From: Macrostomum lignano
Lineage: Eukaryota
Direction of reading: 5' to 3'
Length of the DNA stretch: 64,000 nucleotides
NCBI GenBank assembly: GCA_002269645.1
Contig: NIVC01001426.1
Coordinates: 62,001-126,000, forward strand
A program made the position numbers and the translations under genes. Positions within the stretch are counted from its first letter, which is position 1. Every line of letters begins with the position of its first letter. A model generated the notes under the pieces. That model searched no databases, was not told the origin of the DNA, and saw only the letters and a program-made list of their open reading frames with translations. This document shows, in pieces, positions 9,808 through 59,051 of the stretch.

Positions 9808-12800
9808 AGTGAGTGTAATTCTGCTTGCAATACACGATTCTAGAAGCTATATTGCTATTTTTAGTTTATTTTCAAAGTTAGGGGATCTTTAATTAAAAGG
9901 AAAAATTGGCATTAAATTGGTAAAGCAGGTTTACAATGAAATTAACAAATTTAAAAAGGCAAATAATTGTCTACCGATATGTAGTGTAAACTATATTGTA
10001 GAGCTAATTTTATTAGTGTCTAAAGATGTGAAAATTTCACATTGAAAAATGTTATCTTGGTTGATGCAAAAAGTTCGAGTCTATGAAACCCACCGATATG
10101 TAGTGTAATAAACTTTATTAATTAATCTAACCCGATTCTTTCACCCAGTGTCGCTGGATCCTAACAACCCAACCAGTCGGCGTCAGCGCGACGCCAAGAA
10201 GAAAGGCGTTCCTGGAGGATCAAAAGCAGATCGGAAGCAGCGGAAGCAACAGCAGCAGGCCGCCGGCAGTTGCTGGGTGGATGCTTGGACCGAGCAGCCG
10301 GCCGCCAGTGGCTCGCGTCATCCCAGCCACCTTCGCGGCCGTGACATCGGCCTATTTTACGCCAATCGTCAACGCGAGAAACGTCAGTTTGAGGATATTT
10401 TTCATGCGCCAGAATTGATTCAACTGAGCGATTCAACCGCTGTCCGATTGCAACAGTTGCTAGGCGTTGCTACAGACGCTGGTGTTGCTAGCGGCGGCGT
10501 TAGCGGAGATACCGGTTTGTCTGCGATGTCGGTTGACGAAGCTGTCGCTTGTCGTTCAGCGAATTACAAAGCTTTGAAACCGAATGCCCAACTGGATGCC
10601 AAGCTGATGAAGGAGCTGCAGCTGATGGAGAAGCGAATTTCGCCTGCGATTGCCGAATGCAGGCAGCGGCTGCCCGTGTGGCAGGCCAGGGAACGGCTGG
10701 TTGCCGCCGTGAACCGCTGCGATCAGGTGAGGGGGGGCTGTGCGATTCTTATTGGGGCCTTCTGTGTTTTATGTGCTGCCTGTCTGTGTTTTGTGTGCTG
10801 CCTGTCTGTGTTTTATGTGTTGTCTGTCTGTGTTTTATGTGCTGCCTGTCTGTGTTTTATGTGTTGTCTGTCTGTGTTTTATGTGCTGCCTGTCTGTGTT
10901 TTATGTGTTGTCTGTCTGTGTTTTATGTGCTGCCTGTCTGTGTTTTGCGTGCTGTCTGTGTTTTATGTGCTGCCTGTCTGTGTTTTATGTGCTGCCTGTC
11001 TGTGTTTTGTGTGCTGTCTGTGTTTTATGTGCTGCCTGTCTGTGTTTCATGTGCTGCCTGTCTGTCTATATAAGCGAGATACGACAAGTGTAGCTCCAAT
11101 ATCTTGGTAGTTTTTCAACACAACTTTCTGCGAATTGCCAGGTGCTGGTTATGTCCGGCCCGACTGGATCCGGGAAGTCCACCCAGATGTCGCAGCTGCT
11201 GATTGACTCAGCCATTGCAACTGGTCATGGCTCCACGGCTCGAGTCGTGGTCACCCAGCCAAGGCGCCTGGCGGCCACCGCGCTAGCTGAACGAGTAGCT
11301 GAGGAGCGGGGCGAGTGGCTTGGAGTGTCTGTTGGATACCAGGTTCGGGACTGCTGTAGCGTATATCAGCTCCAGAACCTCAGCTGCTGGGCCAGCCTCC
11401 CAGATGCTCAGTTGCTGGGCCACCAGCCTCCCAGATCATCAGTTGCTGGGCCAGCCTCCCAGATGCTCAGTTGCTGGGCCACCAGCCTCCCAGATCATCA
11501 GTTGCTGGGCCAGCCTCCCAGATCCTCAGTTGGTGGGCCAGCCTCCCAGATCCTCAGATGCTGGGCCAGCCTCCCAGATCCTCAGTTGCTGGGCCAGCCT
11601 CCCAGATCCTTAGTTGCTGGGCCAGCCTTCCAGATCCTCAGTTGCTGGGCCAGCCTCCCAGATCCTCAGTTGGTGGGCCAGCCTCCCAGATCCTTAGTTG
11701 CTGGGCCAGCCTTCCAGATCCTCAGTTGCTGGGCCAGCCTCCCAGATCCTCAGTTGGTGGGCCAGCCTCCCAGATCCTCAGTTGCTGGGCCAGCCTCCCA
11801 GATCCTCAGTCGCTAGGCCAGCCTCCCAGATCCTTAGTTGCTGGGCCAGCCTCCCAGATCCTCAGTTGGTGGGCCAGCCTCCCAGATCCTCAGTCGCTGG
11901 GCCAGCCTCCCAGATACTCAGTCGCTGGGCCAGCCTCCCAGATCCTTAGTTGCTGGGCCAGCCTCCCAGATCCTCAGTTGCTGGGCCAGCCTCCCAGATC
12001 CTCAGTTGCTGGGCCAGCCTCCCAGATCCTCAGTCGCTAGGCCAGCCTCCCAGATCCTTAGTTGCTGGGCCAGCCTCCCAGATCCTCAGTTGGTGGGCCA
12101 GCCTCCCAGATCCTCAGTTGCTGGGCCAGCCTCCCAGATCCTCAGTCGCTAGGCCAGCCTCCCAGATCCTTAGTTGCTGGGCCAGCCTCCCAGATCCTCA
12201 GTTGGTGGGCCAGCCTCCCAGATCCTCAGATGCTGGGCCAGCCTCCCAGATCCTCAGTCGCTGGGCCAGCCTCCCAGATCCTTAGTTGGTGGGTCAGCCT
12301 CCCAGATCCTCAGATGCTGGGCCAGCCTCCCAGATCCTCAGTCGCTGGGCCAGCCTCCCAGATCCTTAGTTGCTGGGCCAGCCTCCCAGATCCTTAGTTG
12401 CTGGGCCAGCCTCCCAGATCCTCAGATGCTGGGCCAGCCTCCCAGATCCTCAGATGCTGGGCCAGCCTCCCAGATCCTTAGTTGCTGGGCCAGCCTTCCA
12501 GATCCTTAGTTGCTGGGCCAGCCTCCCAGATCCTCAGATGCTGGGCCAGCCTCCCAGAGTGTCAGTTGCTGGGCCAGCCTCCCAGATCCTCAGATGCTGG
12601 GCAAGCCTCCCAGATCCTTAGTTGCTGGGCCAGCCTCCCGGATCCTCAGTTGCTGGGCCAGCCTCCCAGATCCTCAGATGCTGGGCCAGCCTCCCAGATC
12701 CTCAGTTGCTGGGCCAGCCTCCCAGATCCTCAGATGCTGGGCCAGCCTCCCAGATCCTCAGATGCTGGGCCAGCCTCCCAGATCCTCAGATGCTGGGCCA

Positions 12801-15800
12801 GCCTCCCAGATCCTCAGTCGCTGGGCCAGCCTTCCAGATCCTTAGTTGCTGGGCCAGCCTCCCAGATCCTTAGTTGCTGGGCCAGCCTCCCAGATCCTCA
12901 GATGCTGGGCCAGCCTCCCAGATCCTTAGTTGCTGGGCCAGCCTTCCAGATCCTTAGTTGCTGGGCCAGCCTCCCAGATCCTCAGTTGCTGGGCCAGCCT
13001 CCCTGATCCTCAGTTGGTGGGCCAGCCTCCCAGATCCTCAGATGCTGGGCCAGCCTCCCAGATCCTTAGTTGCTGGGCCAGCCTTCCAGATCCTTAGTTG
13101 CTGGGCCAGCCTCCCAGATCCTCAGTTGCTGGGCCAGCCTCCCAGATCCTCAGTCGCTAGGCCAGCCTCCCAGATCCTCAGTCGCTAGGCCAGCCTCCCA
13201 GATCCTCAGTCGCTGGGCCAGCCTCCCAGATCCTTAGTTGCTGGGCCAGCCTTCCAGATCCTTAGTTGCTGGGCCAGCCTCCCAGATCCTCAGATGCTGG
13301 GCCAGCCTCCCAGAGTGTCAGTTGCTGGGCCAGCCTCCCAGATCCTCAGTTGCTGGGCCAGCCTCCCAGATCCTCAGTTGGTGGGCCAGCCTTCCAGATC
13401 CTCAGTTGCTGGGCCAGCCTCCCAGATCCTTAGTTGCTGGGCCAGCCTCCCAGATCCTCAGTTGGTGGGCCAGCCTCCCAGATCCTCAGTTGGTGGGCCA
13501 GCCTCCCAGATCCTCAGATGCTGGGCCAGCCTCCCAGATCCTCAGATGCTGGGCCAGCCTCCCAGATCCTCAGTTGCTGGGCCAGCCTCCCAGATCCTCA
13601 GATGCTGGACCAGCCTTCCAGATCCTCAGTTGCTGGGCCAGCCTCCCAAATCCTCAGTTGCTGGGCCAGCCTCCCAGATCCTCAGATGCTGGGCCAGCCT
13701 CCCAGATCCTCAGATGCTGGGCCAGCCTCCCAGATCCTCAGATGCTGGGCCAGCCTCCCAGATCCTCAGATGCTTGACCAGCCTTCCAGATCCTTAGTTG
13801 CTGGGCCAGCCTCCCAGATCCTCAGTTGCTGGGCCAGCCTCCCTGATCCTCAGTTGCTGGGCCAGCCTCCCAGATCCTCAGATGCTGGGCCAGCCTCCCA
13901 GATCCTTAGTTGCTGGGCCAGCCTTCCAGATCCTTAGTTGCTGGGCCAGCCTCCCAGATCCTCAGATGCTGGGCCAGCCTCCCAGAGTGTCAGTTGCTGG
14001 GCCAGCCTCCCAGATCCTCAGATGCTGGGCAAGCCTCCCAGATCCTTAGTTGCTGGGCCAGCCTTCCGGATCCTCAGTTGCTGGGCCAGCCTCCCAGATC
14101 CTCAGATGCTGGGCCAGCCTCCCAGATCCTCAGATGCTGGGCCAGCCTCCCAGATCCTCAGTCGCTGGGCCAGCCTCCCAGATCCTTAGTTGCTGGGCCA
14201 GCCTCCCAGATCCTCAGATGCTGGGCCAGCCTCCCAGATCCTCAGCTGTGGCTATTTATATCGCCACTGGAATCATGTCTCCAATCTCACCAATTCTTCC
14301 GTCAAAGGTTCGTCTGGAGCGCAAGATGCCGCAGCGCCTGGCGGGCTCAATCGTGTACTGCACCGTTGGCATTCTGCTGCGATGGCTGGAAAGTGACCCG
14401 TCACTGGCCAGCGTCAGCCATCTGATTGTTGACGAGGTGACGTGAAATTCTTTCATATTGTACGAGTATATTATCTAGTTGGTTAGAGCGTCGGACTCAA
14501 GACTGAAATGAGATTTGACTCTGACATAGTTGCGCCTGAGCACATCCGGCCCATTATTCCAGTGCATGTACATCTGTTGACTCGTCAAACTTGTCAGGTA
14601 CACGAGCGCAGCGCGGAGACGGACTTACTGCTCGCTGAATTAAAGAGAACAATCTTGCCTAGCCGACCAGATCTCAAACTCGTGCTCATGTCTGCCACGC
14701 TAGACGCCGAACAGTTCTGCCGCTACTTCGGGCCGTCAAGCGAAAGCGCGTCAGTTGAAGGCCGCCTGTACCCGGTTAAAGTTCGCTCTCTGGAACAGTG
14801 CCTTAGCGAGTCGAATTTTGAATTCTTCTCAAAATCGGGCTCCAATTTGACCAGCCTGGCCAATAAGAATCGGCAGGCAATGCAGAATCGGCTGAGGTCG
14901 GATCGGATCGCTCCGCGCGAAGCTCGATCCCGATTGGCTGAGCGGGAACGCGAGCTCCGATTGGCTGCCAATGAGGCTGTGAAGAAGTTTCAATTGTCAT
15001 CCAGCCATGCGGATCTGCTGGTTGCTATGGGCTGCGAGGAGCCGCCCGTGGAACTGGTGGCTCACATGATTAGTTACGTGCATAGGACACAGCCGGCTGG
15101 GGCTGTGCTAGTCTTTGTGCCCGGAATGAAGCAGATTAAGGATTTAATTACGCTGCTGGTAATCAAATATTCTGTGATTTTATCTTTCATTTTTAGTATC
15201 CGAATTTAGTTTATGGACTAGCAATCTAAGTGCCCCCCTTCGGGACACTTAGGAGGAGCAAGGAGCAAAAATTAGTCATGCAAATCCATTAAAAAAGCAA
15301 ATTTTAGCAACCAATTCCTTCTTCAGCTTTATAATCACCTTATTCCAGTAAAATTGTCACGGACCAAGATGCTTGCTATGAATCTCTTTTTTTTCTAAAA
15401 GTAACTAAACGACAACATAAAAAGCCTTCACAAAGATAGCAGGCATTTCCCCTAAATAGAGAGCATCCCCCAGATAGCAAGCATCCTCCAGATAGCAAGC
15501 ATCCCCCAGATAGCAAGCATCCCCCAGATAGCAAGCATCCCCCAGATAGCAAGCATCCCCCAGATAGCAAGCATCCCCCAGACAGCAAGCATCCCCCAGA
15601 TAGCAAGCATCCCCCCAAATGGCAAGCACCCCCAGATAGCAAGCTTCCTCCGATAGCAAGCATCCCTCCGATAGCAAGCATCCCTTCGATAGCAAGCATC
15701 CCTTCGATAGCAAGCATCCCTCCGATAGCAAGCATCCCTTCGATAGCAAGCATCCCCCAGATAGCAAGCATCCCCCCGATAGCAAGCATCTGCAGATAGC

Positions 15801-26744: not shown

Positions 26745-27422
26745 TGGGTTGGCGGTGTCTTAGTCCATAGGTTTGGGTTGGCGGTGTCTTAGTCCATAGG
26801 TTTGGGTTGGCGGTGTCTTAGTCCATAGGTTTGGGTTGGCGGTGTCTTAGTCCATAGGTTTGGGTTGGCGGTGTCTTAGTCCATAGGCTTGGGTTGGCGG
26901 TGTCTTAGTCCATAGGCTTGGGTTGGCGGTGTCTTAGTTCATAGGCTTGGGTTGGCGGTGTCTTAGTCCATAGGCTTGGGTTGGCGGTGTCTTAGTCCAT
27001 AGGCTTGGGTTGGCGGTGTCTTAGTTCATAGGCTTGGGTTGGCGGTGTCTTAGTCCATAGGTTTGGGTTGGCGGTGTCTTAGTCCATAGGTTTGGGTTGG
27101 CGGTGTCTTAGTCCATAGGTTTGGGTTGGCGGTGTCTTAGTCCATAGGTTTGGGTTGGCGGTGTCTTAGTCCATAGGTTTGGGTTGGCGGTGTCTTAGTC
27201 CATAGGTTTGGGTTGGCGGTGTCTTAGTCCATAGGTTTGGGTTGGCGGTGTCTTAGTCCATAGGCTTGGGTTGGCGGTGTCTTAGTCCATAGGCTTGGGT
27301 TGGCGGTGTCTTAGTTCATAGGCTTGGGTTGGCGGTGTCTTAGTCCATAGGCTTGGGTTGGCGGTGTCTTAGTCCATAGGTTTGGGTTGGCGGTGTCTTA
27401 GTCCATAGGCTTGGGTTGGCAG
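26745..27422. repeat. 29-bp minisatellite between the convergent PXMP2 and WSC genes
   Basis: Unit GGGTTGGCGGTGTCTTAGTCCATAGGTTT. Confidence 0.95.
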
Positions 27423-27901
27423 ATTCCCCTGGCCCAGACGTCAGGGTCCAATCTCGGGCTATATGCCGCTGTTAGTGCCCCTCAGCGGCAGAGCCCCTCC
27501 CAGGGCTGATCCGCGGGTAGCTCCCGGCTTCCCACTCCCGTTTAACTTGGAGAAACTTGGAGAAGCATATAACTTTTAAAGCAACAGAATATTTCAAACT
27601 AGGCTTCAACTTCATTGCTTTTTCTTCCCTCCCAATTGCTGGGCTAAAAGTCATGGATGTGCATTCAGGTGTGGCTTAGAGGAGTGTGATATACACCAGT
27701 CATTTACCGAAGTCATTTTGCAGCATTTAAGAGAGTTGATGTCATTTGGGATCAGCAGAACGAGGGATATAATGAAAATTAAAATGCAATAAAAAGAAAT
27801 AAAAAAAGAATTTCAACTTTTTGCGATTTACTTCTTTTATTTATCCGAGATTCGAGTTTCTGTTTAAACTCGCACTAGTTCACTCCGGCCTGAACTGAGA
27901 T

Positions 27902-30900
27902 TCAGGACTGTATATTCAGTTTGAACACCAGCATAAACATGTCGCTCCCGCACACTTCCATGTTGAATCTCACCCCGGGGCACTTGTACTGGCAGAAGCT
28001 CATGTCGTATTTGTTTTGCTCCCCAGATGGAATTTCGTTGCCGCAATGGCAGCTCCCTTGTGAGTCCTTTGTCATCAAGCCGAAATATTTGGTCAGATAC
28101 TTGGCACACTCACTGGCGCAAACTGACTGAGTCATGTCCGAGCTGGACAGTTTGGGTCCTCCCAGCGTTGATGAATCACTGGCAAAATAGCAGCCAACAG
28201 GATCTTCTGAAAGTTGCAATAATTAAAAATCTTTTTACTGTTTATCCATAATAACGATTCATCTTAGGCTTCAGGGTTGTACAATTTGTATGTATTTCTA
28301 TGTACTTGAGAAGGTGTTCATAGAATGACGGACCGATTAATGGACACTTACCCCAATTATGGATACTCACCCTATGGACACTTATTCCGATTATGGATAC
28401 TCACCCTATGGACACTTATCCCGATTATTGATACTCACCCTATGAACATTTACCCCGATTATGGACTCATCCTATGGACACCTACCCCGATTAATGGACA
28501 CTCACCCTATAGACACTTACTTTGATTAACGGACACCCTATGGACACTTACCCCGATTCATAGACACTCACCTGGCCGACTAACTACTTTTGGTTTCGGC
28601 AAAACGTAAATGCTGATTGCACTGCTGCCGCCGCAGACTTCCAATGGATTTCCGGGACAAGTGAGCCTGCAGCGGTCCTGCACCACTTGGGTCGTGTTGA
28701 TCGTAAATCCGCAGTAGCATTTGGTTGCGTCAAAAATTCCAAAATAGTTGGCAAATCTCAGGGTGCAAAAGAAGTAACAGTCGACTACCGTCATTTCCGG
28801 GTGGCTCCGCGGTATATCATCCAGGGCCGTCTCGGTGCCGTGGTGATTTGCGTAGCAGCCAACGAATTCAACTGCAGTTGTGCGGTTTTTATTGTTGTTG
28901 AAGCCAAAGCTTCATCAGTAACTGCAGCTCTCATTGTGCAGTCTGTGATCAGTAGAGCAAAATTAAAACAAAACATTCCACAATTCAACTTACATTCACG
29001 AACTGAAACGAAAACAAAAGTGCTTTAGAACTTGCATGTACCTTATTTTCGTTGTGTTATCTTGTCAGAGCAAAGTAGCATCTATTGACAAGATAAAGAC
29101 TGCTCACCTTTCGGCTTTGAAGTTTTAGGTGTCGTAGTGATCGATTCTGGAACTGTAAGTCATCGAAAATGTCTTTATACCAGCTAATTAATAAAGAAAT
29201 TTGAAAAAAAGATTAGTAAACTTTTTCAAGTATGCTTATTATAAAACAAAAAGTTTATCACATTTTCTAAATTCCAAACTTTCCAAACTTCACACTTTCC
29301 AAACTCCACACTTTCCAAACTCCACACTTTCCAAACTCCACACTTTCCAAACTTCACACTTTCCAAACTCCACACTTTCCAAACTCCACACTTTCCAAAC
29401 TCCACACTTTCCAAGCTCCGCACTCTCCAAACTCCACACTTTCCAAACTTCACACTTTCCAAGCTCCGCACTCTCCAAACTCCACACTTTCCAAACTCCA
29501 CACTTTCCAAACTCCACACTTTCCAAGCTCCGCACTCTCCAAACTCCACACTTTCCAAACTCCACACTTTCCAAACTCCACACTTTCCAATCTCCACAGT
29601 TTCCAATCTCCACAGTTTCCAAACTTCACACTTTCCAAACTCCACAATTTCAAAACTTCACACTTTCCAAACTCCACACTTTCCAAAACTCCATAATTTC
29701 CAAACTCCACACTCTCCAAGCTCCACACTCTCCAAACTCCAGACTCTCGCAGTTCTTGCAAGTTACTCCACACTTATTAAGCGCTAATTAAATATTTATC
29801 ACCTGACTTACCTGTCGGCTTCTCAGTTGGTGGCGGCGGTGGGACTGAAATGACATAATTATCAAGTTTATGAGTTTGATTAAGCGCTAATTAAATATTT
29901 ATCACCTGACTCACCTGTCGGCTTCTCAGTTGGTGGCAGCGGTGGGACTGAAATGACAATTATCAAGTTTATGAGTTTGATTAAGCGCTAATTAAATATT
30001 TATCACCTGACTCACCTGTCGGCTTCTCAGTTGGTGGCGGCGGTGGGACTGAAATGACGTAATTATCAAGTTTATTAGCTTGATTAAGCGCTAATTAAAT
30101 ATTTATCACCTGACTCACCTGTCGGCTTCTCAGTTGGTGGCGGCGGTGGGACTGAAATGACATAATTATCAAGTTTATGAGTTTGATTAAGCGCTAATTA
30201 AATATTTATCACCTGACTCACCTGTCGGCTTCTCAGTTGGTGGCGGCGGTGGGACTAAAATGACAGAATTATCAAGTTTATGAGTTTGATTAAGCGCTAA
30301 TTAAATATTTATCACCTGACTCACCTGTCGGCTTCTCAGTTGGTGGCGGCGGTGGGACTAAAATGACATAATTATCAAGTTTATTAGCTTGATTAAGCGC
30401 TAATTAAATATTTATCACCTGACTCACCTGTCGGCTTCTCAGTTGGTGGCGGCGACGGGACTGAAAGCCATTAATGTATAATTCGATTATAAGCAGTCGG
30501 GATAATATTGATGAGGTACTTACCGCAGGAAGTAGGATATATTCTACTTATGAATATGCCCTGTTTTCACAGTTCACACATGCTGTAAAGATTCTTTTCA
30601 TATTCGTCTCTCGCTACTCGTTATTAGACGACATTCTTGATCTGTTATCTACATTCATTTTGTTTAATTGCTAGCTGGGTGTCTAATTGCCAGCCGGGGT
30701 GTTTAATTGCTTGCCGGGGTGTTTAATTGCTTGCCGGGGTGTTTAATTGCTAGCTGGGTGTTTAATTGCTAGTTGGGTGTTTAATTGCTAGCTGGGTGTT
30801 TAATTGCTACTCGTAGCTGGGTGTTTAACTGCTAGCTGGGTGGTTAATTGCTTGCCGGGGTGTTTCATTGCTAGCTGGGTGTTTATTTGCTTGCCGGGGT

Positions 30901-33900
30901 GTTTAATTGCTTGCCGGGGTGTTTAATTGCTAGCTGGGTGTTTAATTGCTAGTTGGGTGTTTAATTGCTAGCTGGGTGTTTAATTGCTACTCGTAGCTGG
31001 GTGTTTAACTGCTAGCTGGGTGTTTAATTGCTAGCGGGGTGTTTAATTGCTAGCTGGGTGTTTAATTGCTAGCTGGGTGTTTAATTGCAAGCCGGGGTGT
31101 TTAATTACTAGCCGGGGTGTTTACTTGCAAGCCGGGGTGTTTAATTTATTGTTAACAGTGTCTGTCGATTCCATGAAATAAAAATGCTCCTTTCTTAAAG
31201 TTCCAGTGGTCAGCCATTATTTTGTAAACAATTATTTTTACCTAAACAATATTTTTACCTGGTCGTCTTAAAAGCCAATGGCTTCAGTGACGGAGATGGC
31301 TAAGGCGGTGCGGTGCACGATGGATTCTTTCTAATTTATTGATTACTTTTTTGCTTCTTTATTCAAATGGGAAATCTGTACATTTTTACATTATTTACAT
31401 TTTGTAGACCGTTACTCCACTTATATTACCTGTTTTTTTACCTGGTGTGCATACCTGTCTGGTCAGAGATTTCACCTGATCTATAACAGCATCAAACTAA
31501 TCACAATAAAACTTTAACCCACTATATATGGTCAGTAAAGCTCCCTAATTAACAGGTTCATAATAGGCACATTGCTGCACAAATATAAATTAGCTCACCT
31601 GGACCGGTGTCCTCATCGTCTGCGCCTGAAGCGGTATAGGAAGTAGAACCGTATAAGCCTTTAATTATCTTGGTTAATTTTGGTTATTGATTATTATATT
31701 ATTATTATTATTGATTACACCTGTCAAAATTTGGTAAGATGTGCAACCGACAGCTCAGCCGCAGCTATTGCGCGGCGCATCTGAAGGCTGCGTACGGCTG
31801 TTCAGTCCAAGGACTGGGGGGGGGGGGTTGCACACACGTCTTTCTCAAGGACATAAATCGTTCCAGTGAGATTGGGAATCGAACCCCTGACCTTCGAGTC
31901 GTGAGTGCGACGCTTGTGGTTTGTATAGCCTACTAGTAGTTAGAGCTTCGGACTCATGACTAAAAGGTCGGGGGCTCGATTCTCTTGAGCTACTTGGAAC
32001 AGTTTGTGTCGCGCAATATGAGCTGGCTATGAGCTGTCAGTTGCACATCTGTCGATTGGGGCAGGTGAAATCGATCTATTAGAATTATGATTATAATATT
32101 TAGATAGTAAAATGAATAAATTCATTATATGCTCACCAGAAATCGACGGTCCGAAGTTAATGACAGCTAAAATATTTTCAGTGTTTTATTTAAGCAATGC
32201 TTGAACTGTGTGTATGTAACATGACAGTGTATAATTGTGCAATTATGAATTTGCGAACGTGAAAATAATTTGCAGCTCACCAAACAACGCTTGCTCCTCT
32301 GTCAGATCGTGCAAAGCTGTTCGGACATATTTAAATACGGTGACAGTAAATTAGTGCCGGATTTATGAGTAACGCTGCTATATAAATCGAATCATTTCAC
32401 AGCTGTTTCATTCTATCTGCCCCCAGCTGTCCATCTCTACAATGTACCCTGGTATCATCATATAGTATACTATCATATACTTACTGATTGGTTTTGCATC
32501 GTTATGGCTATCAATGTCGCCGGAAATCGCTAAAAAATAGTTTGATTAAAAGTTGAGTTGGGAATGAAATAAAATGCGAATGTAGACAGGGGCATCGCCA
32601 CCGGGGAAGACAGGGGGGATGTGTCCCCCAGTAAAAGCTATGGGGGACATGCCAATGCATGCTTTGTCCCCGCCACGGCCTACCTTTTGACCCGCGTTTT
32701 ATTGCCGTTATGGAAATCAATAATTTTGTTTCACGGCGACAAAGTATAGCGCCTGGCGTCTGCGGCGCCAAAATGAGTGCCCGAGGTGCCAAAATGAGTG
32801 CCTGTGGCGCTAAAATGAGTCCTTTGGTACATGTACCATAATAAGTTCCTGCGGCGCTAAAATGAGTGCCTGCACGTGGCGCTAAAGTAAATACCTGTGG
32901 CGCTAAATGAGTGCCTGCACGTGGCGCTAAAGTAAATACCAGTGGCGCTAAAATGAGTGCCTGCAGCACCAAAAGAAATGCCTGCGGCGCCTAAATGAGC
33001 GCTGACGCACCGATTCTTAAAATGATGTGCATGTTGCAATTGTTATGTGCATGTACATGTAGATTCTTGGCTTTGTCCTCCCAACATGAATCCATGGCGA
33101 CGCCCCTGAATGTAGACATGTACATGTAAATATACGTGTACATTATGGAGCACTCAATTAACATAGTTGGCGTAGTCTGTACATGCATGCATGTCTACAT
33201 GTAATTTAGAGTGCAACTATACTTACCGAAAATTGAAGGCTCGAAGGGGTCATCCTGGGCTGCAAAATGTAATACTGTAATTAAAGCTTACGTTTGCAGT
33301 TTACTGCAGATATGTGTGAAGTTTTCTTTCAAATGTCAGGTTTTCTAGCTGGTTAGTTGGCTTTCACGCATTTAAAAACGAACTGAAGCTCGAAAAGTTG
33401 ATACTCAGCGTTTATAACAATTATTTGATAAATTAATTTTTAATAAACCTTATAATAATCAGATTTCTTTTAAAAAGTACGGAGTATGGGTTCTTATTTT
33501 TTATCACGAATATTGTTATTGCTTTTGATAGAAGTGGAGACCAACAGTTGTTCATCTTTTGATGTCTTGCGTTCTTTTCTCAATTGATTTTCATAAAGCG
33601 TGCATGTTCTGTGCCAAAAATTTATAAAATATGGCACAACTCAAGTCATTGTTTTATGAATCTATTTTTATCATTCCGTTTCATTTTGTTAAGAGCCTCT
33701 TCACGGCAATCGGTTCTAGAACCAGAATAAATTCGAGTTCTAGAACCAGAACCAGTGTAATATGAGGAGCTTCCGATCCGAACCCATTTTATGTTTGACA
33801 GTTTTTACAATTTAATTTTGTCGTTCTTTGACTTTGTTTTGCCTTGGATATGACAAAAAAACGGAATAATTATATAACAATAATAAAAACTTGACGATTT

Positions 33901-34357
33901 CAAAATATACTTTACTGTTAAAGTGTAAACATGACAGCGGTTCGATAAAATTTCTCGAACCATATTCCAGAACCAGAACCATCGATATGAAGAGGCTCTT
34001 AGTGATTAACTAAGTACTAAGAATTATAGTATAGATTCATAAAACCAATGAATTGAGCTGTACCATTCTCATAATCTTTTTTGCACAGTACATGTACGTG
34101 GGATATAAAATTACCAAAGAATCCTAATTTTCTAAACGAAAAGTTTTATGAACATCAGAGCTATAAGGCAAGACATTATTTTAATTATTGCAGACCAATA
34201 GTTATTCTTCTGAATACGAAAACTGGAGATGTGAAGACTAAGACTACTCTATCAGAAATTACCAACAGTTGATAATCAAAACCAAAAGTATTCGCTCACC
34301 AAAGCAGAGAGTGATGGCCGCCAATATTAGGAAAACAGTTAGCTTTTGGACAGCCAT
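27902..34357 (-). CDS. Secreted protein: signal peptide, micro-exon-encoded Pro/Thr-rich stalk, two C-terminal WSC domains
   Basis: Minus-strand exons 34300-34357 (MAVQKLTVFLILAAITLCF), 33227-33259, 32485-32529, 32281-32316, 32137-32166, 31599-31658, seven 33-nt exons (30428-30460, 30325-30357, 30222-30254, 30119-30151, 30016-30048, 29915-29947, 29812-29844), 29108-29152, 28572-28871 (WSC1: GCY..MT..C..FC..YFG..CYCG..C..CPG..VCGG) and 27902-28206 (WSC2 + TGA). All junctions are GT-AG, phase 1, and keep one open frame. AATAAA lies about 60 nt after the stop. Confidence 0.8.
28325..28560. repeat. About 34-bp minisatellite in the WSC1-WSC2 intron; unit contains splice-donor-like GGTGAGT/GGTAAGT on the sense strand
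   Basis: Plus-strand units contain ACTCACC / ACTTACC. Confidence 0.8.
29275..29770. repeat. 16-bp minisatellite in a WSC-gene intron
   Basis: Unit CTTTCCAAACTCCACA. Confidence 0.92.
29775..30465 (-). repeat. 7-copy, about 103-bp tandem repeat; each unit is a 33-nt exon plus an intron of about 70 nt
   Basis: Unit on minus: ...TTTCAG|TCCCACCGCCGCCACCAACTGAGAAGCCGACAG|GTGAGT...; encodes (V)PPPPPTEKPT. Confidence 0.88.
30672..31145. repeat. 19-20-bp minisatellite in a WSC-gene intron
   Basis: Unit TAGCTGGGTGTTTAATTGC. Confidence 0.9.
31737..32050. mobile_element. Head-to-head pair of tRNA-derived SINE-like copies
   Basis: Minus copy ...ACTCACGACTCGAAGGTCAGGGGTTCGATTCCC (B box); plus copy TAGCCTAC...GGACTCATGACTAAAAGGTCGGGGGCTCGATTC. 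Both end in GCTGTC(A/G)GTTGCACATCT. Confidence 0.6.
32587..33108. mobile_element. hAT-type MITE
   Basis: TIR CAGGGGC(A/G)TCGCCA, perfect 8-bp TSD AATGTAGA, internal GGCGCTAAAATGAGTGCC repeats. Confidence 0.85.
33690..34001. mobile_element. MITE nested in an older element related to 4528-5023
   Basis: 14-bp terminal inverted repeat TAAGAGCCTCTTCA / TGAAGAGGCTCTTA; internal AGAACC repeats. Confidence 0.7.
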
Positions 34358-35182
34358 CACAGAATATCTCTTTGCAATTTGATTTCAATGTCTTAAGCTG
34401 AATGCAAGCGACGAACAATGTGTTCTGTGTTTGAAAAAGTATAACGAAAACTGATTGGAGATTTTATTTATAAAACTTTGCTAACCCAACATTTTCAAGC
34501 GTTTTTTAAAGAATATAAAAAATTTCGAATTAGCCAACTTTCTTAACCAGACAGGAATGGAATTTGAAATTTGAATATTTTCAAAACTTATTGGAATTCA
34601 ACGATTCAGTTTTTTGTTTCATTTAAAGCCGGCTCAGCAAAGAAACGAAGTCAAGGACCAGGCATAGCTCGGGATTGTAAATTTGCCTTGTGACAATTTC
34701 GATCAACTGACTCGAGACATTTGAGAATGAACAAAAACTGCATGCCTTCAACTCTTTAAACCCATTTGGTATATTTGAATACATAACGAATATTAAATTT
34801 TGTTTAAAATATATTTTTTTACACAAAAACTAACAGAGACCCCAGCAACTGCTGCCATGAAATTTCATAAACGATAATTCAATGATTGCGCAATTATCAG
34901 CACAGGTGTTAACTTTCAAGTTTCACGGGCCGCTAATTGAGAAACTAAAACTTATTTATGGTAAAAGACCAGCAACTGCTTGCGCAGACAACATTGCTTC
35001 TTCATAAAAAAGCAGAATGCACAATACAAAAGCCAAAACACAACACATAGACAAGAGCAGAAAGGCAGGAGAAAAGATCGAGTTCAGTAAGTCGTATGCG
35101 AACATATATATTATGAAATCGTGTTCACTGCACAGCTTTAAAATCCTTTGCAGTCGAGCTGTGCATCAGAGTTCCTCCCGGT

Positions 35183-36288
35183 CTAATAGCCACCACGCCC
35201 GCCTGCAAAGTCATCGACACAGGGGGTTTGGCGGATCGCAAATAAGTTATTTAGTATAAAAGTGCATTTTTAACAAAATTTTATTTCACTAAAGCAAATC
35301 AACCTTGACACTCACCACGGCCACCGCGAAAGCCGCCGCCAATGCCGGCGCCGCCACGTCCGCGACCACCACCACGGCCGCCGGCGCCGTACGGCTGGAA
35401 TCGCTGCGGGCCGCCGCCGAATCCGCCAACCGGCTTGGCGGGGCCGCCAGCGTAGCCTTGGCTGCCGTAGGAGCCGAAACCGCCGCCATTGTCATAGGCG
35501 CCTTCGCCACCTTCGCTGTAGCCTCCGGCGTCGTAGCCTACGGCATCCCCGTAGCCACCGTAGCCTGCGTCACCGTAACCTCCATAGCCACCGTAGCCGC
35601 CTCCATAGCCGCCGCCATATCCGCCTCCGTAGCCACCCCCATATCCGCCGCCGCCGCCGCCGCCGCGCCCAGCGAAGCCGCCGCGAACGTTGAACCCGGA
35701 AGCTTGGCGAGCCTTCACCTCGGCCATCTGCTCTTTGGACAGGGCCTTCTTGCAGTCCACTCGCGGATTGCCGCCGATGTTGTGCGGCTTGTACAGAATC
35801 GCCTTGTCCACCGGATCGTAGTCCTTGAACGTGACGAAGCCGAAGCCGCGCGGCTTGCCAGTCTCCCGCATCACGGCAATCTCCGCTGACGCAACCTCAC
35901 CGTAGGAGCCGAAATACTCGCGCAGATCGTCCTCGGTGGTCTCCGGCTTCAGACCGCCCACAAACAGCTTCTCCACTCTCACGTGGCTCTCGTCCTTGTT
36001 CGCGTCACCCCGGGGCATCGCCCGCTTCGTGTCCACCTCCTTGTTGTCGAGCACATGCGGCCGGTTCGCCTGCGCGTCATCCACGCTCGACTCGTCCTTG
36101 TAGGTGACGAAGCCAAAGCCGCGAGACCGGCCAGACACCTTGTCCTTCATCACCACCACGTCAACAAGCTCGCCCCACTGGCCAAAGTGGCCCTTCAGAT
36201 CGTCTTCTGTCACGTTTGGCGTCAGGCCGCCAATAAACAGCTTTCTGAGCTGCTCAGTCTCCTTGTCGCCTCGGTTACCAGCCATCAT
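35183..36288 (-). CDS. HNRNPA1-like: hnRNP A/B-family RNA-binding protein, copy A (2 RRM + Gly/Tyr-rich tail, about 330 aa)
   Basis: Exon 35316-36288 (ATG at 36288) spliced in phase 1 to 35183-35202 (..GGRGGY*). RNP motifs KLFIGGL/RGFGFVTY and KLFVGGL/RGFGFVTF; KRAMPR and CKKALSK linkers. Confidence 0.92.
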
Positions 36289-38202
36289 GTTGAATTCTGA
36301 AGTCTGAAAGCAATCCAACTAGATTGGTTGGGCATTTAACAGAATGGAACCCTAGTAGGGTAGAGTTACAGACTTCAAATGATGATGACATTCTTTCAAT
36401 CACAGCCACACAAAGAACTTTCTAATGTCTGACCTTAAACGTCCTTATTGATCTAGAACACATACAGACAAGCGCTCAATCAATTCCAGATCATTGTTAA
36501 TCACATTCACGCTTCAACAATGCCCGAATAATTACATAATAATTAAATGACAACTAAGGAAACTCTTTCACGATAGAAAAAGGCTAGTTAAGCTAACGCA
36601 CGCACTGCCTCTGCTGCGAGAGCAACAATTTCGCTAGCTAGGAGCAACACCGGGCCTATTTAATAATTAGCTTTTTACAGCTTGGCCTGGCAGATTAGTA
36701 ACTCCTTTTCCATTAATAACTTATATTTCAGCCTGTCAACTCATGTTCATTTTTGATGCTAACATTGGGTCGATCAGATCAAATTATTAATCTTACACAA
36801 GCGAAATATGGAACAACAATTATCAACTAAATTAGAGTTTACCGCCTTTGATAAGTAATAAAAATAGCCCAAGCCTTGAATTTGAACAATGAAGCTACTA
36901 ATTGTGGTGAAAGTGAAGTTTTTCAGCGTGAGAAAAGTTAATTAATAACTACAAAAATAGTCACACCCGCTTACACTTACGACTATATGTATACTTATAC
37001 TACTACTAGTTATATAATAAGTTATTTTGCACCTAACTGACAACAATCATGTTCACGCAAGAGCAAAGTTGTAAGAGCAATTGACACAAAATTGCGTGTT
37101 GCCTTAAGCTTGAGGAATTCAAACAATATTTAATTAACTGGCATATTATTACAAGTGGCAGTTTTCTCAAAAACAGAACTGATAAATTACACAAGACTAA
37201 TTAGTATACAGCTTATTCATTACATATGGATAGGTAAATATGAACACTAAAAATCGACTATTAGCTGCTAAGTAAAACAGTCTTAAGTTGAGAAAATACT
37301 CGCTAGTCGCTACTAATGCCCGCCTGACACCTGAGGCTGCAGATAGTTATTCGAGCTGCAATTTAAATAATATTCCTCCCACATAGCCTTAGAACTCATG
37401 ACAAAATAAAATAAGGAATATGGGCACACTTCAGATTTATAAAAAAAATAAGTTCATAATCCCCATTTAGCAAAGAGTAATTGCACAACACATTTATTAG
37501 ACCTTGCCGTCTATGCATTAATAGTTAAGCTGGTGATTGGCTGCCTCACTGACTTCGGGGTCGAGATTTCAGTGCAGTCCGCTGAACAACCTTTTCAATA
37601 ACGTGGCTGATTCCATTACCAACATGATCTGTGCTCTCCTTTTGATTGGCTAATTATCTTAGCCCGAATTATCTCCTCACTCAGTCCATTGTCGAGACCA
37701 GGCCTGTCCTACTTACGCTATAAAAACGGTCTCAACACGCACACACAATCTCCTAGGTTGCTTAACATCTGAGTGGCCCTGCGCTTCAGACTGACTGACT
37801 GACTGGGTGTGTGTGTGTGACTTTTGCTCAACCTGAAATTAGTAGATATAAATATAGATTTAATGACTGATTCTTAAGTTAATTATAAGCACATTTTCTA
37901 GCATATAAACACCGTACACTTAACTTACAGAGAACAACTTTCTTAAAGATAGTTTGAGCTAATAAAAAATTAGCCTTGCACGCAGTTCAAACAGGCGCAC
38001 GCATACAGCAACAGATTTTAGTGAGCAATAAAAACAAAAAATTGATTAAATTTGCAATCAAACTTACCCCGAATTCCATGAGAACAGCATCCAATTGGTA
38101 AACAGACGACAGAGAGATTTAGTAGCAGGTTTTCCCCAAGACTCGAATTACAGGCAGCATAAAAGTCGATTGTGCCTTCCGTTAGTTAATCAGCCAGTCC
38201 CA

Positions 38203-47775: not shown

Positions 47776-50012
47776 CTATATACTAATTTCTATATACTAA
47801 TTTTGCGCTGTATTCGTGCGTGCGTGCGTGCGTGTAATTGATTTTTTCGAGAATGGCTCAACCGATTCTCTTCAAACTTTCACCATTCGATCAGAAATTT
47901 TCCTGGGATGTTGAATGCATCTTGGCTAAGAAATTGATCAATATTAAAGGGATTAAATATTCGAAAAACATGATTTTCTGCGAAGGTCAAGCAGCTCTTT
48001 CAACCTGAAATGCATTGTAAGAATGCTAGAGAAAAACCTGACTGACTGAATTTCAATTCTGATAAAGATTGCATCACAGCAAGTTGAAAACAGTGCCAAA
48101 GAAATGCACACACGACTTGATATAAATTGCGTAACCATATTTCTAACTTAAATTGAGACTGATACTGGCTGACTGAGAAATTGATTATGTCATAACTTTT
48201 TACTCTAACCGATTTGCTATAAGAATTGAATTATAAGGGCCACAATTCATGCTCTCCGATCGACAAGAGATAGCCTAGATGCTATCAGACTGGACTGCTA
48301 ATTCAGCGACCTGGGTTCAAATCTTAGTAGTGCAAAATAATTTTTTTATTAAAACATCTTAAAAACAAAATGCTGAACATAAAAGAGGCACAATGTCAAA
48401 CAAAAGTGGCACCATTTCAAACATTAAAGGCCACCATGTCAAACATATATGACTCCATGTCAAGCGTATAAGTGACTCCATGTCAGACATTAAAGAGCCA
48501 TCATTGCATACATTAAAGTGCCACCAGGTCAAACATTAAAAAGCCACAATGTCAAACACAAAACAGCTACCATGTCAAACATAAATGGGGTTCCTACTAT
48601 CTTGGAGTGCTTGCTATCTGGAGATGCGTGCTATCTGGGGGTGCTTGCTATCTGGGGGTGCTTGCTATCTGGGGGTGCTTGCTATCTGGGGGTGCTTGCT
48701 ATCTGGGGGTGCTTGCTATCTGGGGGTGCTTGCTATCTAAGGGTGCTTGCTATTAGGTGGATGCTTGCTATCTGGGGTGCCTGCTATCTTGGAGTGCTTG
48801 CTATTAGGTGGATGCTTGCTATCTGGGGTGCCTGCTATCTGAGGGTGCTTGCTATCTGGGGGGTGCTTGCTATCTAAGGGTGCTTGCTAACTGGGGGTGC
48901 TTGCTTTCTAAGGGTGCTTGCTATTAGGTGGATGCTTGCTATCTTAGGGTGCTTGCTATCTGGGGTGCTTGCTATCTGGAGATGCTTGCTATCTGGGGGT
49001 GCTTGCTATCTGGGGGTGCTTGCTATCTGGGGGTGCTTGCTATCTGGGGGTGCTTGCTATCTGGGGGTGCTTGCTATCTGGGGGTGCTTGCTATCTGGAG
49101 ATGCTTGCTATCTGGGGGTGCTTGCTATCTGGAGGTGCTTGCTATCTGGGGGTGCTTGCTATCTGGGGGTGCTTGCTATCTGGGGGTGCTTGCTATCTGG
49201 AGATGCTTGCTATCTGGGGGTGCTTGCTATCTGGGGGTGCTTGCTATCTGGGGGTGCTTGCTATCTGGGGGTGCTTGCTATCTAAGGGTGCTTGCTATTA
49301 GGTGGATGCTTGCTATCTGGGGTGCCTGCTATCTTGGAGTGCTTGCTATTAGGTGGATGCTTGCTATCTGGGGTGCCTGCTATCTGAGGGTGCTTGCTAT
49401 CTGGGGGGTGCTTGCTATCTAAGGGTGCTTGCTAACTGGGGGTGCTTGCTTTCTAAGGGTGCTTGCTATTAGGTGGATGCTTGCTATCTTGGGGTGCTTG
49501 CTATCTGGGGTGCTTGCTATCTGGAGATGCTTGCTATCTGGGGGTGCTTGCTATCTGGGGGTGCTTGCTATCTGGGGTGCTTGCTATCTGGGGGTGCTTG
49601 CTATCTGGGGGTGCTTGCTATCTGGGGGTGCTTGCTATCTGGAGATGCTTGCTATCTGGGGGTGCTTGCTATCTGGGGGTGCTTGCTATCTGGGGGTGCT
49701 TGCTATCTGGGGGTGCTTGCTATCTGGAGATGCTTGCTATCTGGGGGTGCTTGCTATCTGGGGGTGCTTGCTATCTGGGGGTGCTTGCTATCTGGAGATG
49801 CTTGCTATCTGGGGGTGCTTGCTATCTGGGGGTGCTTGCTATCTGGGGGGTTGCTTGCTGTCCTAGGATGTTTTCTTTTTGCATTGCACTTTATTTGAGC
49901 AGTTTTTCTATTGTCTATGTGAAGACTTTTTTGGCCGTCTTTTTGATACTTGTAGAGAGCCAGAGATTCTATCTAGATGCCCCCCCCCATCGGGGGGGGC
50001 GAAGATTGCTAG
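47776..50012 (+). mobile_element. Non-autonomous Helitron carrying a 17-bp minisatellite array
   Basis: 5' A|TCTATATACTAAT, (GTGC)n, AACCGATT...AAACTTT motif; 3' GCCCCCCCC-ATC-GGGGGGGGC hairpin + ATTGCTAG|T. Confidence 0.68.
48604..49860. repeat. 17-bp minisatellite array
   Basis: Unit GGGGGTGCTTGCTATCT, with an internal duplication of about 545 bp. Confidence 0.95.
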
Positions 50013-57354: not shown

Positions 57355-58860
<1,506 letters not shown>

Positions 58861-59051
58861 ACGCTTTTAAGTTACAACTATCGCATAAATAACATAAACT
58901 TGAATTCTCAGTATGCACAAGTCCTAATAATATTACTGGTAGTAGACTGATATTGGATTAAAAACACAACAAAACACAAACTCACCCGGCTAATGAAATC
59001 ATTACTACTCCAGAGAGTCGCAAACGGGCAGTCAGCAGCCATCCTACAGTG

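What the first reader, a model, noticed from the sequence alone, without database searches (positions are those of the whole stretch)
29775..30465. A minisatellite whose repeat unit is a complete exon plus intron
Seen: seven units of about 103 bp each contain acceptor, 33-nt exon (VPPPPPTEKPT) and donor. Differences between units spare the splice dinucleotides: TTTCAG becomes TTTTAG in two units and GTGAGT becomes GTAAGT in one, all still canonical. Inference: ordinary VNTR expansion and contraction changes exon number and so stalk length, adding allelic variation on top of exon skipping. It shows a way micro-exon arrays could be born from tandem-repeat dynamics.
Basis: partly seen in the sequence, partly recalled or inferred. 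Interest (0 to 1): 0.7.

Follow-up and report, generated by a model that had tools for sequence, protein, structure and literature searches.

The report
Tandem array of micro-exon-plus-intron units
In a secreted sugar-binding protein gene of the flatworm Macrostomum lignano, a 103-base repeat carrying an 11-codon exon and a 70-base intron is present 7, 8 or 11 times in three gene copies, a real and tidy example of a kind of gene architecture already known from schistosome mucins and spider silk.

Summary
Window 29776-30466 (minus strand) is a 103-bp tandem repeat of 6.7 copies at 96% identity. It holds seven 33-nt, phase 1-1 segments, each bounded by YAG and GTRAGT.

The window is Macrostomum lignano Mlig_3_7 contig NIVC01001426.1. 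The array lies in gene BOX15_Mlig001594g5, which encodes a secreted protein with a Pro/Thr-rich linker and two C-terminal WSC domains. The public annotation is RNA-seq-based and splices the units as exons.

Two other syntenic copies of the gene in the same assembly carry 8 and 11 units, with differently ordered unit variants (E-E, A-A-A, and an exact 309-bp three-unit duplication). Exon number has therefore changed by repeat expansion and contraction, as the copy numbers of the gene's purely intronic minisatellites have.

Three points remain unsettled or weak:
- The annotated proteins contain only 5, 2 and 2 units. This could be exon skipping or short-read collapse.
- "Differences spare the splice dinucleotides" is true but expected by chance (P about 0.63-0.69).
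- The protein has no membrane anchor, so "linker" fits better than "stalk".

The architecture is already known from S. mansoni SmPoMuc (27-bp exon 2 repeats), spider Flag silk and vertebrate "overlapping megasatellites". This is a new, unusually compact member of a known kind.

The parts
29776..30466 (-). 103-bp tandem array, 6.7 copies; each unit = 33-nt exon + 70-nt intron
   Evidence: TRF; unit listing
30428..30460 (-). array exon 1 (gene exon 7), VPSPPPTEKPT; edge variant conserved in all three gene copies
30325..30357 (-). array exon 2 (gene exon 8), VPPPPPTEKPT, acceptor TTTTAG
30222..30254 (-). array exon 3 (gene exon 9), VPPPPPTEKPT, acceptor TTTTAG
30119..30151 (-). array exon 4 (gene exon 10), VPPPPPTEKPT
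30016..30048 (-). array exon 5 (gene exon 11), VPPPPPTEKPT; followed by the 68-nt intron
29915..29947 (-). array exon 6 (gene exon 12), VPPLPPTEKPT (C-to-T, seen only in this gene copy)
29812..29844 (-). array exon 7 (gene exon 13), VPPPPPTEKPT, donor GTAAGT
27902..34357 (-). whole gene BOX15_Mlig001594g5: 17 exons, all internal exons phase 1-1; signal peptide, acidic segment, Pro/Thr linker, two WSC domains
34300..34357 (-). exon 1 (58 nt), start codon and signal-peptide-like MAVQKLTVFLILAAITLCF
33227..33259 (-). exon 2 (33 nt) AQDDPFEPSIF
32485..32529 (-). exon 3 (45 nt) AISGDIDSHNDAKPI
32281..32316 (-). exon 4 (36 nt) TLHDLTEEQALF
32137..32166 (-). exon 5 (30 nt) AVINFGPSIS
31599..31625 (-). 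exon 6 (27 nt) GADDEDTGP, last exon before the array
29108..29152 (-). exon 14 (45 nt) VPESITTTPKTSKPK, first exon after the array; its 3' end and donor weakly resemble the unit (nhmmer E=0.89)
28994..29002 (-). exon 15, 9-nt micro-exon (VRE); in two of the three annotated proteins
28572..28871 (-). exon 16 (300 nt), first WSC domain
27902..28206 (-). exon 17 (305 nt with stop), second WSC domain
29259..29745 (.). purely intronic 16-bp minisatellite just downstream of the array (30.4 copies here; 64.8 and 34.8 in the other two gene copies)
30661..31146 (.). purely intronic 19-bp minisatellite just upstream of the array (24.5 copies here; 35.5 and 38.5 in the others)

Best explanation
This is a tandem array of exon-plus-intron units inside a protein-coding gene of the flatworm Macrostomum lignano.

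Origin (inferred). A 103-bp segment was duplicated head to tail. It contained a 33-nt phase 1-1 exon, about 36 nt of the intron downstream (with the donor) and about 34 nt of the intron upstream (with branch region, pyrimidines and acceptor). The junction of two such copies makes a self-sufficient 70-nt intron, so every new unit is a spliceable micro-exon.

Turnover (mechanism inferred, outcome shown). Slippage, unequal exchange or conversion then changed the copy number. The same processes expand and contract the many purely intronic minisatellites of this gene and genome. The three copies of the gene in the assembly now have 7, 8 and 11 units, arranged in different orders of unit variants.

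Consequence (shown from sequence). Each unit adds 11 residues (VPPPPPTEKPT) to a Pro/Thr-rich linker. The linker lies between an acidic N-terminal segment and two C-terminal WSC (carbohydrate-binding) domains of a secreted protein. It is probably extended and O-glycosylated (inferred). Because the exon is 33 nt and symmetric in phase, gain, loss or skipping of units never breaks the reading frame.

Expression. The RNA-seq-based annotation shows that units are spliced as exons. How many are included in mature mRNA is not settled. I expect full or near-full inclusion by intron definition of the 70-nt introns (inferred), with the lower annotated counts partly a short-read artefact.
For: - Array and seven intact AG...33 nt...GT units.
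- The window is identical to NIVC01001426.1 of GCA_002269645.1.
- Annotated proteins P0001, P0002 and P0003 carry 5, 2 and 2 units joined in frame to the flanking exons.
- The annotation is derived from RNA-seq: PMC5730564.
- My 17-exon model with all seven units gives 372 aa, identical to P0001 except for two extra units. All introns are GT-AG and all internal exons are phase 1-1.
- Two WSC domains, Pfam PF01822, E = 7.9e-26.
- Three syntenic loci have 7, 8 and 11 units, and all 26 units are intact.
- Unit-variant maps are H-A-C-D-I-J, K-E-E-A-A-A-D and L-C-F-G-B-F-G-B-M-B. Variants A, C and D are shared between loci, and g1 has an exact 309-bp three-unit duplication.
- All four intronic minisatellites of the gene also differ in copy number between the three loci.
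- Unique flanks differ by about 1.3-3% mismatches plus indels, so these are distinct loci or haplotypes.
- M. lignano is a hidden polyploid and its assembly is redundant.
Against: - The annotated proteins hold fewer units than the genome (5 of 7, 2 of 8, 2 of 11), so some units may not be used.
- No long-read or junction-level RNA data could be examined here.
- Exon and intron parts of the unit are equally invariant (3/33 against 8/70 variable columns, p = 1.0). There is thus no sequence signature of coding constraint within the array; homogeneity could simply reflect youth or conversion.
- The homology of unit 1 with the interior units stops about 6-7 nt upstream of its exon. The proposed original 5' breakpoint (about 34 nt upstream) is therefore not directly visible.
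Confidence: 0.85

Rival explanations
1. Only the edge units are functional exons: unit 1 plus one other. The interior units are silent intronic copies (pseudo-exons) that the spliceosome normally skips, so repeat number changes intron length, not protein length.
For: Two of the three annotated proteins (P0002, P0003) contain just VPS + one VPP unit, although their loci have 8 and 11 units.
Against: Interior units have the same or better splice sites than the used ones, and than the gene's other confirmed introns. The model for the window's own copy uses five units, including interior ones. Identical 33-nt exons are exactly what short-read assemblers and BLAT mapping of collapsed transcripts under-count (method). 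All 26 units keep frame and splice sites, although this is weak evidence given their youth.
Confidence: 0.12
2. Regulated or stochastic exon skipping is the main source of diversity, as in schistosome micro-exon genes. One locus yields a ladder of isoforms with 1 to N units, and the annotated 5-, 2- and 2-unit forms are real isoforms.
For: Annotated unit counts are below genomic counts in all three copies. The unique 9-nt micro-exon is present in two annotated proteins and absent from the third, although intact in all loci. Symmetric phase makes skipping harmless. Variable repeat numbers in transcripts are documented for the analogous SmPoMuc genes (PMC2576457).
Against: There is no isoform-level RNA evidence here. 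Both discrepancies have technical explanations: repeat collapse for the units, and aligners missing 9-nt exons. Introns of 70 nt are expected to be removed by intron definition, which favours inclusion (established knowledge, inference).
Confidence: 0.35
3. The copy-number differences (7/8/11) are assembly artefacts of a repetitive, redundant PacBio assembly rather than real differences.
For: The assembly is known to be redundant and repeat-rich.
Against: The arrays are only 0.7-1.1 kb, well inside long-read length. The three arrays differ in the order of unit variants, not just in number, and sit in flanks that differ by 1.3-3% plus indels. Neighbouring minisatellites differ as well.
Confidence: 0.04
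4. The array is non-coding. The gene model is wrong, and the AG...GT-bounded open segments are a chance property of an intronic minisatellite.
For: The window is full of intronic minisatellites, and there is no within-array signature of coding constraint.
Against: Three RNA-seq-based annotated proteins contain the units in frame between the flanking exons. The phase is the same as for every other internal exon of the gene.
Confidence: 0.03

Closest known systems
Schistosoma mansoni polymorphic mucins (SmPoMuc), exon 2 genomic repeats (Roger et al. 2008, PMC2576457)
   Same: A flatworm gene for a secreted protein. A micro-exon (27 bp there, 33 nt here) and its flanking intron are repeated in tandem. 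The introns are highly homogenised (>93-94% there, 96-98% here). Copy number differs between gene copies (1 to about 20 there, 7/8/11 here). The repeats encode a short repeat predicted there to be glycosylated.
   Different: The SmPoMuc unit is about 1 kb and units are separated by GA microsatellites; here the unit is 103 bp with a 70-nt intron and no spacer. SmPoMuc is a parasite-host interaction multigene family with transcript-level repeat variation demonstrated experimentally; here expression variation is untested. The host is free-living, and the C-terminal part is two WSC domains. No sequence homology was shown or sought.
Overlapping megasatellites (OVERMEGA) of vertebrates (bioRxiv 10.1101/2021.07.19.452908)
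   Same: The definition is met: three or more contiguous direct repeats with a motif of 90 nt or more, overlapping exon-intron junctions. The same model is proposed there: an exon-intron segment is duplicated and amplified, and the intron parts later decay.
   Different: Described there for vertebrates and yeasts, mostly with larger units. Here each unit contains a whole micro-exon and a whole mini-intron, in a flatworm.
Spider flagelliform silk (Flag) gene (cited in PMC2576457; otherwise my own knowledge of Hayashi and Lewis 2000)
   Same: Genomic tandem repeats composed of exon plus intron, homogenised by concerted evolution, encoding a repetitive structural segment.
   Different: Flag units are kilobases long with large exons. 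Introns there are more homogenised than exons; here the exon and the 5' half of the intron are equally invariant.
Schistosome micro-exon genes (MEGs) (PMC4350168)
   Same: Platyhelminth gene; signal peptide; many very small symmetric exons (14 of 17 exons are 9-45 nt, all phase 1-1), so any can be skipped in frame.
   Different: Micro-exons make up only 41% of the CDS, not most of it. Two ordinary 300-nt exons encode known domains. Alternative splicing is not demonstrated, and membership of a MEG family was not shown.
Human LPA kringle IV-2 VNTR, and the collagen 54-bp exon amplification model (my own knowledge; LPA KIV-2 copy number also in PMC13477386 abstract)
   Same: Copy-number-variable tandem units that contain whole exons and introns and change protein length. 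The classic idea is that exon arrays arise by amplifying a DNA segment containing one exon.
   Different: LPA units are 5.5 kb with two exons. Collagen introns have long since diverged. Here the array is young, minisatellite-sized and still about 96-98% identical, introns included.

Membership tests
Tandem exon-intron repeat / overlapping megasatellite (OVERMEGA) | Direct contiguous tandem repeat of at least 3 motifs | tested here: met
   6.7 copies, 96% matches, no indels
Tandem exon-intron repeat / overlapping megasatellite (OVERMEGA) | Motif length at least 90 nt | tested here: met
   Period 103; definition
Tandem exon-intron repeat / overlapping megasatellite (OVERMEGA) | Repeat overlaps exon-intron junctions of an expressed gene | tested here: met
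   Units appear as in-frame exons in RNA-seq-based annotated proteins; 14 junctions lie within the array
Minisatellite / VNTR | Copy number varies between alleles in a population | tested here: inconclusive
   7, 8 and 11 units in three syntenic copies within one assembly of a hidden polyploid. Allelic versus homeologous status and between-individual variation were not testable.
Minisatellite / VNTR | Interspersed unit variants whose order differs between copies (a sign of slippage, unequal exchange or conversion) | tested here: met
   Maps H-A-C-D-I-J, K-E-E-A-A-A-D and L-C-F-G-B-F-G-B-M-B; exact 309-bp three-unit duplication in g1
SmPoMuc-type mucin gene architecture | A micro-exon plus flanking intron forms the tandem genomic repeat, with introns kept highly similar | tested here: met
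   33-nt exon + 70-nt intron, 96-98% identity; compare PMC2576457
SmPoMuc-type mucin gene architecture | About 1-kb units separated by imperfect GA microsatellites; homology to SmPoMuc exons 3-15 | tested here: not met
   The unit is 103 bp with no spacer. The C-terminal part is two WSC domains. Homology to SmPoMuc itself was not searched.
SmPoMuc-type mucin gene architecture | Transcripts with variable numbers of repeats | not testable with these tools
   Only annotated proteins with 5, 2 and 2 units are available; these cannot separate skipping from assembly collapse
Schistosome micro-exon genes (MEG) | Most of the coding region lies in very small symmetric exons | tested here: not met
   14 of 17 exons are 45 nt or less and all internal exons are phase 1-1, but they hold 456 of 1119 nt = 41% of the CDS
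Schistosome micro-exon genes (MEG) | Signal peptide / secreted product | tested here: inconclusive
   The N-terminus MAVQKLTVFLILAAITLCFAQDD looks like a signal peptide by inspection. No predictor was available. No later hydrophobic segment was seen by inspection.
Schistosome micro-exon genes (MEG) | Protein variants generated by alternative splicing of micro-exons | not testable with these tools
   Hints only: unit counts differ, and the 9-nt exon is absent from P0002 although intact in its locus
WSC domain protein (Pfam PF01822) | Significant match to the WSC profile | tested here: met
   E = 7.9e-26, 90.5 bits against a cut-off of 27.8, two stretches. 2573 remote relatives match only the WSC region, at about 30% identity.

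The most novel reading that the evidence does not exclude
The gene is a nascent micro-exon gene in a free-living, early-branching flatworm. On this reading, minisatellite-type amplification of exon-plus-mini-intron units is the general process that builds the symmetric micro-exon arrays of platyhelminth secreted proteins (MEGs, SmPoMuc). It would predate parasitism. Germline copy-number change and in-frame skipping together would give a length-variable secreted lectin.
Probability: 0.2. Interest if true: 0.6.

Novelty: new member of a known kind. Interest (0 to 1): 0.4.

Why it matters
This is a young example of exon-array birth. The introns are still 96-98% identical, the repeat is minisatellite-sized, and three copies in one genome already differ in exon number (7, 8, 11) and in unit order.

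It links the exceptional minisatellite load of the M. lignano genome (15% simple and tandem repeats) to protein-length change.

It is also a compact, tractable counterpart of the schistosome SmPoMuc and MEG architectures, in a free-living flatworm for which transgenesis exists (PMC5730564). Minigenes with defined unit numbers could test how arrays of identical 33-nt exons and 70-nt introns are spliced.

It does not reveal a new principle.

Tried and rejected
- Selection on splice sites. Across 26 units there are 11 variable columns. The chance that none hits the four splice-dinucleotide columns is 0.63 (0.69 for the window alone). Exon versus intron variability gives p = 1.0. Only a weak excess appears in the last 33 nt of the intron (p = 0.035). 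I rejected this as evidence of constraint.
- Older, diverged copies of the unit elsewhere in the window (nhmmer). The only hit is weak (E = 0.89), at the donor end of exon 14. It is suggestive by position but not significant.
- RNA-derived protein fragments or orthologues. The second and third homologue searches found nothing beyond the three NCBI proteins. A full phmmer scan found only remote WSC-domain relatives at about 30% identity.
- Exact exon-exon junction scan of metagenome contigs: no match.
- AlphaFold2 single-sequence model of P0001: mean pLDDT 37.8, unusable. No fold search was done.
- RNA folding of the 70-nt intron: z = -0.3 and -1.4, no signal.
- Rfam on 27000-35000 and tRNA scan of the window: nothing. 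My impression of a tRNA-derived SINE near 31800-32000 is therefore unsupported.
- Literature and supplement searches for Mlig001594, WSC in Macrostomum, and MEGs in Macrostomum: nothing specific. DeMarco et al. 2010 is not held.
Full report

Yes. Tandem Repeats Finder reports one array at window 29776-30466 with period 103, 6.7 copies, 96% matches, no indels and score 1284. On the minus strand I located seven 33-nt segments at 30460-30428, 30357-30325, 30254-30222, 30151-30119, 30048-30016, 29947-29915 and 29844-29812. Their spacing is 103, 103, 103, 103, 101 and 103 nt.

Each segment is preceded by TTTCAG, or by TTTTAG in units 2 and 3. Each is followed by GTGAGT, or by GTAAGT in unit 7. In phase 1 they read VPSPPPTEKPT (unit 1), VPPPPPTEKPT (units 2-5 and 7) and VPPLPPTEKPT (unit 6). 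No ORF of 40 aa or more crosses the array on either strand, so the only coding reading is as spliced micro-exons.

**2. What organism and gene?**

The protein search returned two Macrostomum lignano proteins, and a cluster look-up added a third:

| Protein | Accession | Locus tag | Length |
|---|---|---|---|
| P0001 | PAA68066.1 | BOX15_Mlig001594g5 | 350 aa |
| P0002 | PAA93502.1 | g18 | 314 aa |
| P0003 | PAA71100.1 | g1 | 321 aa, partial |

The locus of P0001 (L001, contig NIVC01001426.1 of GCA_002269645.1, the Mlig_3_7 assembly) is contained base for base in the reverse complement of the window, at window 44357-17902. The window's gene is therefore BOX15_Mlig001594g5.

Mapping P0001 onto the window gives a 17-exon gene on the minus strand, 34357-27902:

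| Exon | Length (nt) | Content |
|---|---|---|
| E1 | 58 | start codon, signal-peptide-like MAVQKLTVFLILAAITLCF |
| E2-E6 | 33, 45, 36, 30, 27 | acidic N-terminal segment |
| E7-E13 | 33 each | the seven array units |
| E14 | 45 | VPESITTTPKTSKPK |
| E15 | 9 | VRE micro-exon |
| E16 | 300 | first WSC domain |
| E17 | 305 | second WSC domain and stop |

All introns are GT-AG and every internal exon is phase 1-1. With all seven units the product is 372 aa, identical to P0001 apart from two extra VPPPPPTEKPT units. By inspection there is no later hydrophobic segment, so the Pro/Thr repeat is a linker between an acidic N-terminal region and two carbohydrate-binding-type domains of a secreted protein. 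It is not a membrane stalk.

A full phmmer scan of 1.84 billion representatives found only remote WSC-domain relatives at about 30% identity. Nothing matched the N-terminal or linker part, so the gene appears lineage-specific.

**3. Are the units really exons?**

The Mlig_3_7 annotation was not ab initio. It was built from STAR-mapped RNA-seq assembled with StringTie and TACO, plus a BLAT-mapped de novo transcriptome (PMC5730564). All three annotated proteins contain the 11-aa units joined directly to each other and to the flanking exons. Two of them include the 9-nt micro-exon, which I take as a sign of read-derived junctions. The array's splice sites are as good as or better than those of the gene's other introns.

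How many units are included is not settled. The annotated proteins have 5, 2 and 2 units, while their loci have 7, 8 and 11. Identical 33-nt exons are just what short-read assembly and multi-mapping (up to 1000 alignments were allowed) collapse. These counts therefore cannot separate real exon skipping from artefact.

Similarly, the 9-nt exon is missing from P0002 although it is intact in that locus. I could find no independent RNA evidence.

**4. Does repeat turnover change exon number?**

Yes, as far as one genome can show it. The three loci are syntenic: the same two upstream genes, and downstream an Mpv17/PMP22 gene in all three plus a DEAD/HA2 helicase gene where the fetched locus reaches that far (L001, L003). 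Their unique sequence differs by roughly 1.3-3% mismatches plus indels. M. lignano is a hidden polyploid and its assembly is redundant.

The exon-bearing array has 7, 8 and 11 intact units. Classing the units by exact sequence gives these maps:

| Gene copy | Unit map (plus a last unit in each) |
|---|---|
| g5 (window) | H-A-C-D-I-J |
| g18 | K-E-E-A-A-A-D |
| g1 | L-C-F-G-B-F-G-B-M-B |

- Variants A, C and D are shared between loci, so they are ancestral.
- E-E and A-A-A are recent single-unit duplications.
- In g1, units 3-5 equal units 6-8 exactly, a 309-bp higher-order duplication.
- The VPS edge unit is conserved in all three copies, and the GTAAGT last unit is shared by g5 and g18. This is the usual pattern in which array edges escape homogenisation.
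- g18 also holds a broken 53-bp partial unit that kept its donor but lost its acceptor.

The gene's four purely intronic minisatellites vary in the same way:

| Minisatellite period | g5 | g18 | g1 |
|---|---|---|---|
| 21 bp | 10.9 | 14.9 | 14.9 |
| 19-20 bp | 24.5 | 35.5 | 38.5 |
| 16 bp | 30.4 | 64.8 | 34.8 |
| 34 bp | 6.9 | 40.9 | 73.9 |

The exon array therefore behaves like its neighbours. The difference is that its unit happens to be a complete exon plus a complete mini-intron.

**5. What the sequence does not show**

With 11 variable columns out of 103 across all 26 units (9 in the window alone), the chance of missing the four dinucleotide columns is 0.63 (0.69 for the window). The two variable consensus positions (donor +3 G/A, acceptor -3 C/T) are transitions that preserve the consensus automatically.

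Exon and intron are equally variable (3/33 against 8/70 columns, p = 1.0). The only heterogeneity is a mild excess in the last 33 nt of the intron (7/33 against 4/70, p = 0.035). Homogeneity thus reflects youth and/or conversion, and coding constraint is not demonstrated.

**6. Mechanism**

Shown:
- the anatomy of the unit;
- frame-neutral symmetry;
- use of units as exons in RNA-based models;
- different unit numbers and orders in three gene copies.

Inferred:
- The array began when a 103-bp segment holding the exon was duplicated, together with about 36 nt of downstream intron and about 34 nt of upstream intron. The junction creates a functional 70-nt intron. The last unit's homology does end 36 nt after its donor. 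Unit 1's homology ends only 6-7 nt before its acceptor, so the 5' breakpoint is no longer visible.
- Slippage, unequal exchange or conversion then drove expansion and contraction.
- Each unit adds 11 residues to an extended, probably O-glycosylated spacer, changing the reach between the N-terminal segment and the WSC domains.
- The 70-nt introns are removed by intron definition, which would favour inclusion of all units.

**7. Comparison with what is known**

The architecture is not new.

- The closest analogue is also from a flatworm. [quoted passage not shown] The introns are more than 93-94% identical, and the number of repeats varies in transcripts. The authors themselves compare this with the spider flagelliform silk gene (PMC2576457).
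- A vertebrate survey defines "overlapping megasatellites" (at least 3 motifs of at least 90 nt across exon-intron junctions). It proposes the same birth model: amplification of an exon-intron segment, then decay of the intron parts. The present array meets that definition.
- Schistosome micro-exon genes share the many tiny symmetric exons and the signal peptide (PMC4350168). Here micro-exons make up only 41% of the CDS, so I do not file the gene as a MEG.
- Human LPA KIV-2 and the collagen 54-bp-exon model are older instances of the same principle (my own knowledge).

What is particular here:
- the very compact unit (103 bp, 70-nt intron);
- the near-identity of the units;
- the direct comparison of three copies in one genome;
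- the free-living, transgenesis-capable host.

**8. Verdict**

The caveats are the statistics, the "stalk" label, unproven exon skipping and unproven between-individual variation. The feature is a new member of a known kind, of moderate interest.

**Things that led nowhere**
- AlphaFold2 without an alignment (pLDDT 37.8).
- RNA folding of the intron.
- Rfam and tRNA scans.
- Search for older diverged units (best E = 0.89 at exon 14's donor).
- Further protein and literature searches.

Noticed in passing
window 28340-28572 (minus strand; intron 16), and L002 16691-18075, L003 16497-18994: The 34-bp intronic minisatellite starts exactly at the true donor of exon 16 (CAG|GTGAGT). Every unit carries donor-like GGTRAGT motifs: 7, 66 and 84 such motifs in the three gene copies. 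It is an array of decoy 5' splice sites directly behind the real one. The layout matches the human F7 IVS7 37-bp VNTR (PMC1557585 abstract).
   Followed up: partly
window 29002-28994 (minus strand): A 9-nt micro-exon (TTCGTGAAT, adds VRE) with canonical TTTCAG/GTAAGT sites. It is included in annotated proteins P0001 and P0003 but not in P0002, although it is intact in all three loci. This is either alternative splicing or a mapping miss.
   Followed up: partly
L002 14175-14274: The g18 copy has a 53-bp, 100%-identical partial duplication inside the first array intron. It is a broken unit that kept the 3' end of the exon and the donor but lost the acceptor and the 5' part of the exon. It shows that array turnover also produces dead units and a potential decoy donor.
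   Followed up: partly
window 27902-34357 (minus strand): The whole gene has a micro-exon architecture: 14 of 17 exons are 9-45 nt, all internal exons are phase 1-1, and the lengths are 33, 45, 36, 30, 27, 7x33, 45, 9 and 300 nt. Exon 2 is also 33 nt but shows no detectable similarity to the array unit.
   Followed up: yes
window 1-64000: The window is saturated with minisatellites. There are more than 25 arrays with periods of 11-44 bp, for example 11372-14245 (28 bp x 102 copies), 48597-49859 (17 bp x 74) and (TAGA)n at 57356-58861. This fits the 15% simple and tandem repeat content reported for the genome.
   Followed up: no
window 35299-36318 (minus strand): A single-ORF gene lies immediately upstream of the WSC gene on the same strand. 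It encodes an hnRNP A/B-like protein with two RRM domains (PF00076, E = 1.6e-36) and a Gly/Tyr-rich tail. In all three loci it sits about 0.8 kb upstream. Because many M. lignano transcripts are polycistronic precursors, the two genes might share a transcriptional unit.
   Followed up: no
window about 31800-32000 (minus strand, intron 5): This stretch looked by eye like a tRNA-derived SINE (GGTTCGATTCC box-B-like motif). Neither ARAGORN nor Rfam reports anything there, so it remains unconfirmed.
   Followed up: partly
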